From assembly GCA_964035545.1 (NCBI GenBank), contig OZ037768.1:19265700-19329699 (forward strand): 64,000 nucleotides of DNA, given 5' to 3'. The position numbers were made by a program, and so were the translations under genes. Numbering within the stretch: position 1 is the stretch's first letter; each line of letters starts with the position of its first letter. Shown here one piece after another: positions 1,185 to 63,806 of this stretch. Below the pieces are notes generated by a model that saw only the letters and a list, made by a program, of their open reading frames with translations, was not told the origin of the DNA and did no database searches. This DNA comes from Bugula neritina. Its lineage: Eukaryota; Animalia; Bryozoa.

Positions 1185-4100
1185 TAAACTGCAGATTGAA
1201 TTGCGCCGGTTCTTGCTTACAAAATAGTAACTGCTTAGCATTTGCTTATGGTGAGAGTTCAGAGATGTGCAAACTTTCTATCTGTGATGATGATGTACCA
1301 GTACTCAGTGACAGTGACAGTGCTGGTAAGGAAAGTTGGAGTGTTGGGGAATTGGTGAGTCACATTTTACTATAATCAGTTTAAAAAGAAATATATAATC
1401 TAAAGGACAATGTAAATTTGCATAAAGTTATTTTAATTTAAACCAAGCTTTAAACTGCTTTTTCAGTATTGCTTTACAATCACTTTTAAAGAAATATGGA
1501 TACTTTTAAACAATTATTCATAAACAAGCGATTTAAAATAAGTTTTGAACTTACTGCCAAAGAAGTAACAACTATAGTACAAATAACTTCTTCTGATATG
1601 ACAACTCCTATACGACTTTCTATATATTATATTATTATTTCTCCTATCATTATACTATGGAATTGGTTTTTGTTCTTAAATAAATAATTTAAAATGTAAT
1701 AAATGTCAATTAAAAATGTATATTTGTCTTCACAGTCAAACCTTTAACTTGACTATCAAGAATTAATATCAAACAGTTGATGATAATAAAAATATGAAAA
1801 TTTTTGTTATAAACTTACCTATATATACTCATTCAGGTACTTAGTGAGCCAATGAGATGTGCTGACTGGTTTAAGACAAAGTATCAAGGTATGCACTTGT
1901 TACTTTAGCATTCTGCTATAAATAAAACTGTTGATGATAGTGGCAGAAGAATATGTATTAAAGTGACCATCACTTAATATTGATTATTGCAAAAATTATA
2001 GATTGCCAAGAAGCATTTGAACTTGGGGAGAGAAATAATGGAATCTACACACTGAGAGATTCAGATACTTCTATGGAGTTTGATGTATACTGTGAGTTTG
2101 ACGGTGAACACGGCTGGACTGTAATACAAAGAAGACTGGATGGTTCTGTTGACTTTAATGAGCATTGGGATAATTATGTGGCTGGATTTGGTAACCTGTC
2201 GGGAGAATACTGGCTAGGTACGTACAAACTATAATAAGCAGTAATTATTAATTATTATCATTTAAAAGTAATTAGATTAACAAGTTTTGACACAATTACA
2301 TTTCATATTACAATATTCAAAACTTTGATCTAGCTGTTTGCTGTACCTGGTGCAATTACTATGTATTTAAAGTTTGCTACGTCTTAATACTTAAGTAAAC
2401 AATTATGTATTGGAGTAACATTTTGTAGCTAAATCAGTTTCCAATAGGCCTAAAGCTAATGGAACTCTTTTGCATATCTATTTATTTATTTTGAGAGCTA
2501 TTGGCAGTAGTTAAATCATGGTAAACATTATTAAATAAAAACTTCCAAGAAGAATTTCTTTCAAGAAGCCAAAAATAAAGCTAACTTTTACAATTAGATG
2601 TATAAAATAAAAACTTTAAAATATTATGTACGGATTGTAGCTTTATTATTTAAAAAATGCTACATTTTCAGGCCGCAAGAAAAATATAAATGTGTATTGC
2701 TAGAGTTGGAAACAACGTTATATATATATATATATAAATAGGTATACGAGAAACATTGTTATTTATTACTTTATTAGGTAAAGTAATTACACTGATATAT
2801 ATATATATATATATATATATATATATATATATATATATATATATATATATATATATATATATATATATATATATATATATATATATATATATAGAAGCTT
2901 CCTACAATTACTGAAATGTGCTCTAAATAAGTTAGTTATATCAATCTGTCTCTTACGCACTCGTTTTTGTGCTGTTTGATTTAATAGTTATAAACTTGAC
3001 TAAATTAGGTTATAATCATCGTAAATCTTTTAGCCATAATGTTGAAAGCTTTTATATAGCATTTAATAAATTTTAATCAAAGTTTTGTGCAGTTAAAGTG
3101 TTAGAATATATTATCTTTTAGAGCAGTTTTGATGACAGGCAGTTGCATAGCTGTTTTTCAGGGTATATGTTCTGAAAGTTTCCTTGAGCTGCTTAAAAAT
3201 TGGTTATAAAATTTTTGCTTGAGGATATCCTTAACAATAAATAATTGTAGTCTGTATACAAAAGTACATTTTATATAATTTAATGAGCAGTTTAATTGCT
3301 TAGACACGAGTTAAAAGTAAGCATGTAGTTGGTATTTTGATTTAGAATGCCTATATAAGGAGAAGAACTATTGATTATTTTTTCCTCTTACTCACTACTC
3401 ACTAGTCATACAAGAAGTCAAAAATTTGAATATATCACTTGACAGTAAATTGCAGTAAATATGCAATTTGCAGGTTTGGATAACATCAACTACTTGACTG
3501 CTACCAACAGAAAGCTGAGTATCTATCTGGAAGATCATGTGGGAGAAGTGAGACATGCCAACTATTCCACTTTCTATATTAGTGACAGCTTGACCAATTA
3601 TATTTTAACTGTGAGATTTTCTATTTTAATAAATACGAACAAATGAATAGATTGATAAATATATATACATATATATATATATATATATATATATATATAT
3701 ATATATATATATATATATATATATATATATATATATATATATATATATATATATATATATATATGATATATATATATATATGATATATATATATATATAA
3801 TATAATATATAATATAATATATTATAAATAACAGTTTATTTAAGGAACTATAATTGTTTATCATTATTTCTGTTACATAAAACTTGACCGTTTTTCAAAT
3901 CATCATGAATCTACTTGTAGAATTACTAAATTTTAAAAGTAATCAAAATCAATTTATCAAAATATTTTTAAAATAAGTTTATTATAAATGAATTAAAAAC
4001 AACTTTTTTTAAAAGCATTTAAGATTTATGCTTGTTCTAGAAAATAGTATTGCTCATTTCAAAGTGCGCCTGTACTTCAATATATTATTAGTTCTCTGGG

Positions 4101-4752
4101 TACAGCGGAGATGTTGTTGACTCCCTCACTATGAACGGCGCCCCTTTCTCTACCAGAGACCGTAAGAACGATGACGGCACCGAACATTGCGGTGAAACTT
4201 ATCAGTGTATGTAATAACTATATCTTAATTCTACAGCAAATGAATAGCCGTCAATGGTAACCTTATGCATGCATAGCAATGCAATAATAAATATTTGCTA
4301 ATGTAACTGACCTTGCATAACTTTTGTAAATGTAAAAATCAGAAGATCTTTGGTCATAAATCTCGTGTTAAATTGTTATGACACTTTTTAAAGGTCAATG
4401 TATTGATTAGATTTGTAATTAAAACCGTGTAGAGTTAAATTTATTATTAATAATGTTAGTGTCTGTAGGCATGTTCATACGTTTCTTTATTTGTAACAGA
4501 AAACCTTAGCAGTTGGCATAAACAAATTATATAATGATACTATCTTGCTACTTGTAGAATTTGACAGTAAATATTACCAATTAATCTAATCTTATTGCAG
4601 CTGGCTGGTGGTTTAACAACTGCCACCTGTCTAACCTGAATGGAGTTTGGTATTTACCCAATAACTCTCCTTTCGCGGGAGGAATTATATGGAAAAACTG
4701 GAAAGGTTATTACTACTCTCTTAAAGCCACCACAATGATGATTATAAGATGA
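1185..4752 (+). CDS. PAN/apple + fibrinogen-related domain protein, gene 1 (signal exon lies upstream of the window)
   Basis: Exons 1185-1354 (PAN: [26 protein letters not shown]), 1837-1888 (52-nt linker), 2002-2217 (A: [37 protein letters not shown]), 3474-3610 (B), 4092-4206 (C: [11 protein letters not shown]) and 4601-4752 (D: [28 protein letters not shown]). All junctions GT-AG and phase-compatible, no internal stops. Confidence 0.9.
2738..2795 (-). mobile_element. Short Penelope-like (family A) terminal fragment embedded in (TA)n
   Basis: Reverse complement of ~28712-28772, flanked on both sides by TA repeats. Confidence 0.7.
2795..2893. repeat. (TA)n microsatellite (representative; similar tracts at ~3658-3800, 9989-10093, 28123-28278, 30530-30600, 33019-33280, 36262-36432, 36694-36832, 44072-44385, 55877-55965, 57328-57497)
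   Basis: Directly visible; these tracts generate the YIYIYI ORFs. Confidence 0.98.
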
Positions 4753-61800: not shown

Positions 61801-63806
61801 ACTACCAAATGACGAAGATTTCTGTCATGAGATAGTAAACATTATTTAACCTTTTTATATCAATTATTAATTATTAATTTCTGAAATGATGGCTACTATT
61901 GTTATAAATAAAATATTGAAATTATACAGTGTCACAAATTTTTCCAAAGTGTATTATTTCTTTACAGATTTAACAGTTATTATACATAATAGATGTTGGT
62001 GTTATATTGATTTTTTCAGGTAGAATAATAAAATATAGTTCACACAGTTGTATATAAATTATTAATGCATATGTGCTCTTAATAAAAAACTAACAACTTA
62101 TTTGCTAGAAAACATGTTATAATATGTAATATTCAACCTGCAGCAAAAATAAATTTCCTTAGCCCAAAAATGAGATTTTATTCACACAAGTTTTACAGCT
62201 ACCAGAATATGTTTGTTCTGTAACACATCCTGTCTGTATATTATATAAATAATATATGAGAAATGGAATTAGTCTCATAAACTATGGTCTATTTGTTAAT
62301 CTTAATTAATGTCATTAACTTTTTACCTCATTGGTTATAAATAAATGCAGCTTATAGACGTGTCCTGTTATTAACTGCACTATTTCAGCAAACAAATCTA
62401 TTGCAGGCAAATCAATTTAGCTTATATATAAGCTATAAATGCTTGTAAGCTGGACATTGGCCTAACAATATAAATAGTGTGTTATGGTCACTATATAACC
62501 AGTAACGTACTATGGGTAGAGCCTTATTTAAGTGATAATTAGTTATAAAATTATCCTTCACAATTTCTTTTATGTTGTAGTATAAAATAAAATCAAAAAT
62601 GGTTTGAAGTAATTTTGTAAATTGGTACACATTTTTGAATATTTTTACTAACATATTGTTTGATTCATTATAGTTTTTACATTGCTAGCTATGGCATCAG
62701 TCTAGACTTATGGCAATAATAAAGTACCAATAAAATGAAACGTATATGGCTGTGCTACATGAATATTGATCAATTTGAACCGATTAATTTTAATTGTTAA
62801 CAAATTATCCCATCAGATTGTCAAGAAGCATTTGAGTCTGGAGAGAGATGTCCTGGTGTCTACACACTGAGAGATCCAGATACTTCTATGGAGTTTGATG
62901 TATACTGTGAGTTTGACAATGAACATGGCTGGACTGTAATACAGAGAAGACTGGATGGTTCTGTTGACTTCTACAGAGGTTGGGATGATTATGTGGCTGG
63001 ATTTGGTTACGTGACAGGAGAACACTGGCTGGGTTAGTACATATAATTTATATGAGAATCACTATATAACCTTGTCTGTCAGTTACAAAAGAAATTAATA
63101 AATAATCTAGTTTTAAGCTCTCAATATGCACTACACACCTATAGGCCTATCTCTGCATTGTCCTGTTCAGATAGCTGGAAGCTCTGAATATGCACTATTA
63201 CAGTTTACAAAACTTTTTTACAATAACTATAAGTTAATTTTTGCTGCCAAACTTAAGGACAAGCATTCACCCATACGTACTATGGTACTAATATTATAAG
63301 CAACAGCTCTATATACAGTAGGTATACTGTGGTCACAAAATTACCACATTTCATTATTCACTGTTATATCAACTTAGGTTTGGAGTACATCAACTACTTG
63401 ACTGCCACCAATAGAAAGTTGAGTATCTATCTGGAAGATCATGTGGGAGAAGTGAGACATGCTAACTATTCCACTTTCTACATTAGTGACAGCTCTACCA
63501 ATTATGCTCTAACTGTGAGAAAACAGATTTTCTATTTTAATAAATATAAACAAACACACACACACACACACACACACACGCACACACGCACACACAAGGT
63601 TATATAATATATAATATATAATATATAATATATAACATATTATATATTATAATATATAATATATAATATATATACAACTTTTTTTTAGTTTTCAGTATAC
63701 AGTGGAGATGCAGGAAACTCTTTTGCACTCGTTGGTCAACCGTTCACTACTAAAGACAAGGATAATGATTTAAATGCTAATCAAAACTGTGCTGAGATGA
63801 GTCATG
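58845..63806 (+). CDS. PAN-FReD gene 7 (last exon beyond the window)
   Basis: Exons 58845-58995 (signal), 61223-61408 (PAN), 62817-63032, 63378-63514, 63689-63806; open and phase-compatible. Confidence 0.9.

What the first reader, a model, noticed from the sequence alone, without database searches (positions are those of the whole stretch)
2002..63032. Constant-exon / variable-exon FReD array: exon A is homogenised while ligand-binding exons diverge
Seen: the 216-nt exon A of genes 2, 3, 4, 5 and 7 is almost identical even at synonymous sites. Genes 4 and 7 differ at one base over ~145 nt (TACACACTG..GGATTTGGT), and pseudogene 2 differs from gene 7 at fewer than ~10 sites. Flanking introns are mostly unalignable, and the PAN, C and D exons fall into clearly different families. 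Known: in ficolin/tachylectin-5-type FReDs the Ca2+/ligand-binding P subdomain is C-terminal (here exons C and D). Inference: exon-limited gene conversion or crossing-over within exon A gives a shared scaffold that may act as a recombination hub between variable PAN and P modules, a germline diversification system for innate recognition proteins. Purifying selection alone does not explain silent-site identity.
Basis: partly seen in the sequence, partly recalled or inferred. Interest (0 to 1): 0.82.

Follow-up and report, generated by a model that had tools for sequence, protein, structure and literature searches.

The report
Gene conversion homogenises one FReD exon
In a 145-kb array of 12 PAN-plus-fibrinogen-like (lectin-type) genes of a bryozoan, one 216-bp exon has stayed almost identical between copies, mainly because the genes copy it into one another, while the exons for the presumed ligand-binding part have drifted far apart; this is a clean example of a pattern already known from protocadherin and MHC genes.

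Summary
The window holds 6 of the 12 exon-A-bearing PAN+FReD genes of one array (C4:19.267-19.412 Mb), plus a C/D-only fragment and an orphan D exon. A 147-nt core of exon A differs at 0-9 bases among 11 copies; G4, G9 and G10 are identical there. The introns beside the most similar copies are unalignable.

For non-sister genes, mean silent-site difference is 0.19 in exon A, against 0.45 (B), 0.67 (C), 0.64 (D) and 0.57 (PAN). Exon A stays near 0.15 while C+D rises from 0.15 to 0.8.

Exon A trees contradict flank-defined sister pairs: AU rejects G9+G10 (p 0.01) and G3+G5 (p 0.04). G9 carries a 5' tract identical to G4's at all but one base. Read-derived contigs show the core at about 14x depth, so this is not a polishing artefact. 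A second FReD cluster differs at 0.62 of silent sites, so there is no universal silent-site constraint.

Best reading: exon-limited interlocus gene conversion. The "recombination hub / diversification system" idea has one suggestive chimera in a diverged lineage but is unproven. C+D have omega 0.59, which is not positive selection. No expression evidence was obtained. This scan already reported gene-conversion mosaics in another FReD family of this genome (s1-472151). This is a new member of a known kind.

The parts
1160..4752 (+). G1: PAN ORF 1160-1372, exon A 2002-2217, B 3474-3610, C 4092-4206, D 4601-4752. It has the most divergent exon A (G1 type: [16 protein letters not shown]), yet its exon B resembles G7/G12/G13.
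   Evidence: ORFs and blastp; splice-bounded exons; Pfam PAN_1 22.8 bits; pS tables
11564..15526 (+). G2, a likely pseudogene: PAN ORF 11564-11770, exon A 12449-12668 (4-nt insertion), B 13132-13270 (2-nt insertion), C 14556-14673, D 15426-15526 (early stop). PAN, C, D and the near flanks resemble G1; exon A is the consensus type.
16866..21973 (+). G3: PAN ORF 16866-17078, exon A 19489-19704, B 20281-20417, C 21283-21397, D 21807-21973. Its four FReD exons match Fibrinogen_C profile positions 5-77, 80-123, 141-168 and 172-218.
25832..30876 (+). G4: PAN ORF 25832-26104, exon A 26623-26838 (5' cassette CGVQVSGI, shared with G9), B 27089-27225, C 28004-28112, D 30710-30876. The C|D intron carries a very high-copy repeat at about 28178-30655.
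36970..41907 (-). G5, the inverted duplicate of G3: PAN ORF 41695-41907, exon A 39190-39405, B 38052-38188, C 37667-37784, D 36970-37136. Its exon A is closer to G10/G11/G12/G7 (pS 0.07-0.09) than to its sister G3 (0.18).
43218..43360 (-). Orphan G2-type exon D at the far end of the inverted duplication; no A, B or C exon accompanies it.
55979..56901 (+). G6 fragment: exon C 55979-56096 and exon D 56735-56901 only. Its upstream DNA (53949-55897) matches DNA upstream of G7's PAN exon, so PAN, A and B are missing.
61204..63806 (+). G7: PAN ORF 61204-61410, exon A 62817-63032, B 63378-63514, C 63689-63806. Exon D lies about 535-700 nt beyond the window end.
26667..26813 (+). The 147-nt homogenised core of exon A, shown here in G4. 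The same core sits in every copy and is identical in G4, G9 and G10.
   Evidence: Read-derived contigs break inside it, and depth is about 1498 against about 107 in the flanks
14042..24433 (.). One arm of an inverted segmental duplication (the partner is 34051-43867 on the opposite strand, 70-89% identity). It created the G3/G5 pair.

Best explanation
The locus is a tandem and inverted array of 12 genes, each encoding a PAN/apple module followed by a fibrinogen-related domain (FReD) split over four exons, A to D. Exon A encodes the A subdomain and the start of the B subdomain. It is kept alike between paralogs mainly by interlocus (ectopic) gene conversion. A break repaired from, or a heteroduplex formed with, another copy can only extend as far as the two copies are still alike. 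The introns on both sides are unalignable, so tracts are confined to the roughly 150-220 bp of exon A, and in a subset of genes to exon B. Strong protein-level constraint on this scaffold part keeps the copies similar enough to go on converting, which is a self-reinforcing loop. PAN and the P-subdomain exons C and D have diverged beyond the reach of conversion and evolve under relaxed constraint. Short tracts also move variant 5' cassettes of exon A (SGERCPGV, CGVQV[ST]G[IV], ELGERNNGI) between genes, so conversion both homogenises and makes mosaics. Shown here: the silent-site deficit, the tree conflict, one mapped tract, the real multi-copy identity in reads, and the absence of a universal silent-site constraint. 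Inferred: homology-limited tract ends, the feedback loop, and any role in recognition.
For: (1) Non-sister mean pS is 0.19 for exon A, against 0.45 (B), 0.67 (C), 0.64 (D) and 0.57 (PAN), and the bootstrap intervals for A and for C/D/PAN do not overlap. pS of exon A stays at 0.14-0.17 while pS of C+D runs from 0.15 to 0.7. (2) In the young sister pairs defined by alignable introns, exon A pS (0.15) is no lower than in other exons (0.14-0.25). (3) Tree conflict: exon A groups G4+G9 at 100/99. AU tests on exon A reject the flank-defined sisters G9+G10 (p 0.01) and G3+G5 (p 0.039), and PAN and D reject G4+G9 (p 4e-8 and 0.0012). (4) Mapped tract: G9 matches its sister G10 in both introns, but from the last ~9 nt of the intron through the first ~45 nt of exon A it matches G4, with 1 difference against 17 to G10. 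(5) The same cassette sits in genes with G11/G12-like flanks in the NCBI Bugula neritina contig L038. (6) A second FReD cluster on the same contig differs from this one at pS 0.62 in exon A (0.54 in the core), so silent sites are free to change. (7) Exon A shows no RNA-structure signal (z +1.07) and the window has no Rfam match. (8) Contigs built from reads of two studies show the core at about 14x flank depth and break there, as expected for true multi-copy identity.
Against: Exon A copies from a diverged lineage (about 9-16% non-coding substitution divergence) do not form lineage-specific groups. The three exon A types predate the split, and consensus-type copies interleave. Homogenisation was therefore not fast relative to that split. 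In the core, cross-lineage silent differences for consensus-type and G9-type counterparts are fewer than the flank divergence predicts: 3 observed against about 8 expected, P about 0.03-0.05. This could mean extra nucleotide-level constraint rather than conversion alone. GC3 of exon A is not raised (0.33; core 0.32), unlike converted regions in vertebrate examples. The clades for the AU tests were chosen after the distances had been seen. My run-length test is confounded by regional rate differences.
Confidence: 0.75

Rival explanations
1. Nucleotide-level constraint on the exon A core (for example dense splicing enhancers or another overlapping signal), together with strong protein constraint, keeps all copies near one optimal sequence. 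Conversion would then be incidental.
For: The core is also nearly unchanged across lineages whose flanks differ by 9-16%: G9-L034 has 1 silent difference in 29.7 sites, G2-L036 has 2 in 29.5, and G10-L038a has 0. Observed against expected gives P about 0.03-0.05. There is no GC3 rise in exon A. Core protein sequence is invariant at most codons.
Against: Between the two FReD clusters of this genome the same core differs at 0.54 of silent sites. The G1-type gene and its counterpart L035 differ at 4 of 28.8 silent core sites (0.14), equal to their flank divergence of 0.13. Constraint cannot explain the shared derived G4/G9 cassette in genes with unrelated flanks, nor the AU-rejected sister pairs. 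No RNA structure was detected.
Confidence: 0.12
2. One reading: exon A is a recombination hub at which crossovers re-assort variable PAN modules with variable P-subdomain modules, giving a germline combinatorial system for recognition proteins.
For: Contig L036 from a diverged lineage has a G8-like PAN-III exon and upstream DNA (71-77% identity) joined to exon A plus G2-like downstream DNA (87-89%, with exon B 91% identical to G2). Our G2 has a G1-like PAN-I upstream instead. The junction lies within 60 nt upstream of exon A or inside it. G13 has a PAN of the G3/G5 type (100/99) but a D exon nearest to G4 (76/68), and PAN rejects G4+G13 (p 0.0012).
Against: The best-resolved event, G4-G9, is a short non-reciprocal tract, not a crossover. 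D does not reject G13+G3+G5 (p 0.30). L036 may be a paralogue lost from our genome rather than the G2 orthologue, and its junction cannot be placed inside exon A. PAN, C and D trees mostly agree on G1/G2, G3/G5 and G9/G10, with G7/G8 supported in exon C only. C+D omega is 0.59, below 1.
Confidence: 0.12
3. The identity is an assembly artefact: collapse, or polishing with multi-mapping reads.
For: Nothing positive. It is conceivable only for the last 1-2% of identity in the core.
Against: Each copy has unique flanks and its own exon-end variants. Contigs built independently from reads of the likely source sample, and of a 2016 sample from another study, show the core at high multiplicity (about 1498 against about 107) and break inside it. 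Counterparts in JGI and NCBI assemblies carry the same core.
Confidence: 0.02

Closest known systems
Regional gene conversion in clustered protocadherin variable exons (fugu and zebrafish; PMC1852091, which cites Noonan et al. 2004)
   Same: In a tandem array of paralogs, one part of the coding sequence is more than 95-99% identical even at silent sites, while another part stays divergent and carries the phylogenetic signal. The authors make the same argument: purifying selection does not act on silent sites.
   Different: There the homogenised block is the 3' part of one large exon and shows raised GC3. Here it is a separate 216-nt exon bounded by unalignable introns, GC3 is not raised, and homogenisation is not lineage-specific at the depth tested.
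[quoted passage not shown]
   Same: Homogenisation is exon-specific: the scaffold domain is homogenised while the ligand-binding exons of the same genes diverge.
   Different: The protein fold and phylum differ. For MHC, within-species homogenisation is documented; here it was not seen.
Biomphalaria glabrata FREPs (IgSF+FReD), diversified by gene conversion and point mutation (as summarised in PMC7588048)
   Same: These are invertebrate FReD multigene families in which gene conversion is invoked. PAN/apple+FReD combinations are reported in molluscs (PMC7588048).
   Different: FREPs carry IgSF domains, and the reported diversification is somatic and affects the IgSF region. Here there is no IgSF domain, the events are germline, and conversion mainly homogenises the FReD scaffold exon.
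Gene-conversion mosaic in SRCR-EGF-ZP-FReD-ZP paralogs of the same genome (earlier scan note s1-472151)
   Same: Same genome, a FReD-containing tandem family, and exon-sized exchanged pieces.
   Different: A different gene family and locus. I did not re-test that note.

Membership tests
Fibrinogen-related domain (Pfam PF00147 Fibrinogen_C) | Profile match above the curated cut-off (22 bits) | tested here: met
   G3 exon A scores 78.6 bits and exon D 49.4 bits. Exons B and C score 18.4 and 18.0 bits alone; each is only 38-45 aa. Together the four exons tile profile positions 5-218 of 221. The best solved relative is angiopoietin-2, E 3e-20.
Fibrinogen-related domain (Pfam PF00147 Fibrinogen_C) | Conserved cysteine pairs of the A and P subdomains | tested here: met
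   Cys1 and Cys30 of exon A are invariant. The Cys in exon C (NCA/SCA) and the Cys in exon D (WWYxxC) are present in all copies except G13, which lacks both. That these residues pair is inferred from known FReD structures, not modelled here.
PAN/apple module (Pfam PF00024 PAN_1) | Profile match above the curated cut-off (21.4 bits) | tested here: inconclusive
   G1 scores 22.8 bits and G7 23.9 bits (both pass); G3 scores 20.8 bits (just below).
Region-restricted concerted evolution by interlocus gene conversion | Silent-site divergence between paralogs much lower in the region than in the rest of the gene | tested here: met
   pS is 0.19 (A) against 0.64-0.67 (C, D), with non-overlapping bootstrap intervals.
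Region-restricted concerted evolution by interlocus gene conversion | The region's tree conflicts with the tree of its flanks or other exons | tested here: met
   AU tests: exon A rejects G9+G10 (p 0.01) and G3+G5 (p 0.039); PAN and D reject G4+G9. Caveat: the clades were named after the distances had been seen.
Region-restricted concerted evolution by interlocus gene conversion | An identifiable tract with donor-like and recipient-like copies | tested here: met
   G9 compared with its sister G10 and with G4. The direction of transfer is unknown.
Region-restricted concerted evolution by interlocus gene conversion | Paralogs within a lineage more alike than orthologues between lineages | tested here: not met
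   The exon A tree mixes both lineages. Cross-lineage pS is 0.09-0.21, about the same as within the genome at ~0.14.
Region-restricted concerted evolution by interlocus gene conversion | Raised GC3 in the converted region (GC-biased conversion) | tested here: not met
   GC3 is 0.33 in A (core 0.32), 0.28 in C, 0.37 in D and 0.52 in B. This feature is not universal across taxa.
Snail-type FREP (IgSF + FReD, somatically diversified) | An IgSF domain upstream of the FReD | tested here: not met
   The upstream coding exon is PAN-like, not IgSF.
Snail-type FREP (IgSF + FReD, somatically diversified) | Somatic variants within one individual | not testable with these tools
   Only contigs, not raw reads, were available for the runs found.

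The most novel reading that the evidence does not exclude
Exon A's invariant 147-nt core acts as a shared homology anchor. It lets short conversions and occasional crossovers move the variable cassettes at its two ends, and the PAN module upstream, between array members. The bryozoan germline would then carry a slowly re-assorting combinatorial set of PAN-FReD recognition proteins. The cassette position of an extra cysteine (residue 7, residue 11, or none) might alter how the proteins assemble.
Probability: 0.15. Interest if true: 0.65.

Novelty: new member of a known kind. Interest (0 to 1): 0.4.

Why it matters
The array gives a compact, well-delimited case of conversion acting at the scale of a single exon. 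One FReD scaffold exon is homogenised across 12 genes, while the PAN and P-subdomain exons keep the true gene history. This is a practical warning for anyone building FReD gene trees or orthology tables in lophotrochozoans: exon A, and partly exon B, will mislead. It also defines a testable set of bryozoan lectin-like genes whose variable parts are mapped. It does not establish a new diversification mechanism.

Tried and rejected
(1) The sixth TACACACTG hit (34590) and its partner at 6328 are an unrelated repeat, not exon A.

(2) G2 as proof of conversion: dropped. The second cluster shows that the consensus motifs SGERCPGV and FYRGW are ancestral, so G1 may simply have diverged. AU does not reject G1+G2 (p 0.46).

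(3) I first read G2's odd exon B 3' half as pseudogene decay. That was wrong: the intact lineage-B counterpart L036 has the same type.

(4) The GC3 test for biased conversion was negative for exon A.

(5) RNA-structure and Rfam explanations gave nothing.

(6) My GENECONV-like run test found 14 of 55 pairs significant after Bonferroni correction, but it is confounded by regional rate differences and is used only as weak support.

(7) A 'lineage-specific shared silent variant' at alignment column 110 did not hold. Only L035 and L037 share G there, and L034 has a third state. The few other shared silent variants (columns 50, 68, 149) fit either conversion or recurrent mutation.

(8) Fixed-window global flank alignments are partly misaligned around indels. 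Only the clean sides (0.09-0.16 across lineages) were used as the neutral baseline.

(9) Expression: two probable RNA runs gave no contig on G4 exons, only on the repeat in its intron.

The large representative-protein search was not run because the family was not in doubt.

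Full report
WHAT IS THERE

The window is G000:C4:19265700-19329699 of a 216-Mb genome. Earlier scan notes call the organism Bugula neritina. A 69-aa NCBI protein named 'hypothetical protein EB796_019572 [Bugula neritina]' matches exon A at 96% identity. However, the NCBI contig that carries it is only 74-90% identical to this array in non-coding DNA. I therefore treat G000 as B. neritina or a close member of that complex, and the outside sequences as a diverged lineage.

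Stop-to-stop ORFs, blastp and splice-site inspection give a repeated five-exon unit:
- a PAN-like exon;
- exon A, 216 nt;
- exon B, 137 nt;
- exon C, 109-118 nt;
- exon D, 152-167 nt including the stop codon.

Pfam places exons A-D of G3 on Fibrinogen_C profile positions 5-77, 80-123, 141-168 and 172-218. The PAN exons score 20.8-23.9 bits against a cut-off of 21.4. The best solved relative of exon A is angiopoietin-2.

After fetching 120 kb around the window, the array turns out to hold 12 genes with exon A:
- G1-G5 and G7 lie in the window.
- G8-G13 lie up to 82 kb beyond it.
- G5, G9 and G10 are on the minus strand.
- There is also a C/D-only fragment (G6) and an orphan D exon.
- G2 carries frameshifting insertions in A and B and an early stop in D.

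An inverted segmental duplication (14042-24433 against 43867-34051) made the G3/G5 pair. Intron alignability defines the sister pairs G1/G2, G3/G5, G7/G8, G9/G10 and, in part, G11/G12. No gene of the family lies in the 20 kb upstream of G1.

In the 147-nt core from TACACACTG to GGATTTGGT:
- G4 and G7 differ at one base.
- G4, G9 and G10 are identical.
- The eleven non-G1 copies differ from each other at 0-11 bases, or 0-9 if G13 is left out.

Diversity is 0.012-0.026 in the core, against 0.115-0.137 in the first 60 and last 30 nt of the exon. Identity stops within a few bases of the splice sites. For G4-G9 and G5-G10, the pairs with 97.4-97.8% identical exon A, 400-nt flanks align no better than random sequence.

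Nei-Gojobori silent-site difference among non-sister intact genes is as follows (95% codon bootstrap):

| Exon | pS | 95% interval |
|---|---|---|
| A | 0.194 | 0.137-0.259 |
| B | 0.452 | 0.343-0.559 |
| C | 0.666 | 0.576-0.772 |
| D | 0.641 | 0.569-0.714 |
| PAN | 0.568 | 0.493-0.640 |

The exon A core alone is 0.08-0.11 and its ends are 0.33-0.38. Exon B is also fairly uniform among G1 and G7-G13, but not in G3, G4 and G5.

IT IS NOT AN ARTEFACT

Contigs built independently from reads of the probable source sample (X1) stop 22 nt into exon A of G4 and resume 48 nt before its end. Summed depth in the bin holding most of the core is about 1498, against about 107 in the unique flanks. This is what a de Bruijn graph does with a sequence present about a dozen times. 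A 2016 run from another study (X5) also has a high-depth contig on the core. Copies in JGI metagenome contigs and in the NCBI assembly carry the same core.

WHY GENE CONVERSION IS THE BEST EXPLANATION

1. Exon A silent difference is flat at about 0.14-0.17 while C+D silent difference rises from 0.15 to 0.7. Only pairs with G1 reach 0.25-0.39.
2. In the four young sister pairs, exon A pS (0.15) is no lower than in other exons (B 0.19, C 0.14, D 0.25, PAN 0.25). Over the whole exon there is thus no sign of a lower silent rate.
3. Trees disagree. G1/G2, G3/G5 and G9/G10 each come out as sisters, with good support, in at least two of the PAN, B, C and D trees; G7/G8 does so in exon C (95/97) and only weakly in PAN. 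Exon A recovers none of these pairs and instead joins G4+G9 at 100/99.
   - AU tests on exon A reject G9+G10 (p 0.01) and G3+G5 (p 0.039).
   - They do not reject G1+G2, G7+G8 or G11+G12.
   - PAN and D reject G4+G9 (p 4e-8 and 0.0012).
   - These clades were chosen after the distances had been seen, which weakens the p-values somewhat.
4. A tract can be seen directly. G9 follows its sister G10 through both introns. From the last ~9 nt of the upstream intron through the first ~45 nt of exon A it follows G4, with 1 difference against 17 to G10.
5. The second FReD cluster shows that the G4/G9 cassette (CGVQV[ST]GI) is derived and the SGERCPGV cassette ancestral. The derived cassette also sits in two genes with G11/G12-like flanks in the NCBI contig.
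6. That second cluster (7 young genes at C4:24.24-24.31 Mb) differs from this array at pS 0.62 in exon A and 0.54 in the core. Silent sites of this exon can therefore change freely over longer times.
7. Exon A shows no RNA-structure signal (z +1.07), and no Rfam family reaches its gathering score anywhere in the window.

WHAT DOES NOT FIT NEATLY

Five JGI contigs (L033-L037) and NCBI contig L038 come from a lineage whose best counterparts here differ by about 9-16% in cleanly aligned flanks.

- In the exon A tree the two lineages interleave. L035 groups with G1, L034 with G4/G9, and L036 and L037 fall among the consensus type.
- So the three exon A types are older than the split, and there is no lineage-specific homogenisation.
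- In the core, counterparts differ at fewer silent sites than the flanks predict: G9-L034 has 1, G2-L036 has 2, and G10-L038a has 0. That is 3 observed against about 8 expected, P about 0.03-0.05.
- G1-L035, by contrast, has 4 of 28.8, which is the neutral level.
- This fits a family in which private changes in consensus-type copies are erased by conversion from about ten partners, while G1 has escaped. A modest extra constraint on the core cannot be excluded. The counts are small.
- GC3 is not raised in exon A.

THE 'HUB' AND 'DIVERSIFICATION SYSTEM' CLAIMS

The clearest event is a short conversion, not a crossover. Two observations hint at module re-assortment.

- G13 has a G3/G5-type PAN (100/99) but a D exon nearest to G4 (76/68). 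PAN rejects G4+G13, but D does not reject G13+G3+G5 (p 0.30).
- L036 has a G8-like PAN-III exon and upstream DNA joined to exon A plus G2-like downstream DNA, with an intact G2-type exon B. Our G2 has a G1-like PAN-I upstream instead. The junction lies within 60 nt upstream of exon A or inside it.

Orthology of L036 is uncertain, and this is a single case.

In young pairs, pN/pS is 0.79 (C), 0.52 (D) and 0.59 (C+D). The C+D value is higher than exon A's 0.27 (p 0.03) but significantly below 1 (p 0.002). The P-subdomain exons are therefore less constrained, but they are not shown to be positively selected.

No expression evidence was obtained. Two probable RNA runs covered only a repeat in G4's intron.

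COMPARISON WITH KNOWN SYSTEMS

The pattern matches several known cases.
- Regional gene conversion in teleost protocadherin clusters: more than 99% identity in the 3' parts of variable exons, divergent 5' parts, and the same silent-site argument (PMC1852091).
- Exon-4-specific homogenisation of MHC class I (PMC1403747).
- Snail FREPs, where gene conversion is invoked. The same paper reports PAN/apple+FReD combinations in molluscs (PMC7588048). The domain architecture is therefore not new either.
I did not re-test it.

No paper in the searched library links Bugula to FReD arrays.

VERDICT

This is a new member of a known kind, of moderate interest.

Noticed in passing
window 28178-30655 (G4 intron between exons C and D): A very high-copy repeat, presumably a transposable element. 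Read-derived contig depth there is 10^4-10^5, against about 100 in the flanks. It also accounts for all the signal in the probable RNA runs. A related piece at 28800-28924 matches both arms of an inverted repeat at 36496-36719.
   Followed up: partly
window 36496-36719: An inverted repeat just 3' of G5 (98% and 96% identity to 28824-28924 and 28800-28924). Another note on this window calls it back-to-back hammerhead ribozymes. The Rfam scan of the whole window at gathering thresholds returned no family at all.
   Followed up: partly
beyond the window: G13 exon C and exon D (window numbering 145212-145326 and 145986-146152; C4:19410911-19411851): G13 has lost both cysteines of the P-subdomain pair together (NCA to NDA in exon C, WWYxxC to WWYFSG in exon D). 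Its reading frame is otherwise intact.
   Followed up: no
exon A codons 7-14 in every copy (for example window 26643-26666 in G4 and 19509-19532 in G3): The variable 5' cassette moves an extra cysteine. It is at residue 11 in the consensus type (SGERCPGV, also in the second cluster), at residue 7 in the G4/G9 type (CGVQV), and absent in the G1 type. This may affect disulfide-linked assembly.
   Followed up: no
window 53949-56901 (G6): G6 has only exons C and D. DNA upstream of its exon C matches DNA upstream of G7's PAN exon (77%), so PAN, A and B appear to have been deleted. Another note reads this as a 'mini-FReD' with a signal exon spliced to exon C; I did not test that.
   Followed up: partly
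window 26658 (exon A of G4): The only contig of run X1 laid here reads A where the assembly has T. A is the G9 state, and this is the sole difference between the G4 and G9 5' cassettes. It could be a G9-derived contig or an allelic conversion variant.
   Followed up: no
G000:C4:24237199-24313273 (L013-L019): A second, young array of 7 FReD genes. Introns are 85-94% identical, and L018 and L019 are 99.5% identical over 3 kb. Downstream of exon A there is a tandemly repeated intron segment that reads through as hydrophobic repeats (ILCVV...).
   Followed up: partly
many introns, for example window 2738-2911, 3651-3797, 28100-28290: Long (TA)n and (TATATA)n microsatellites recur in the introns of the array, often directly after exon B or exon C.
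   Followed up: no
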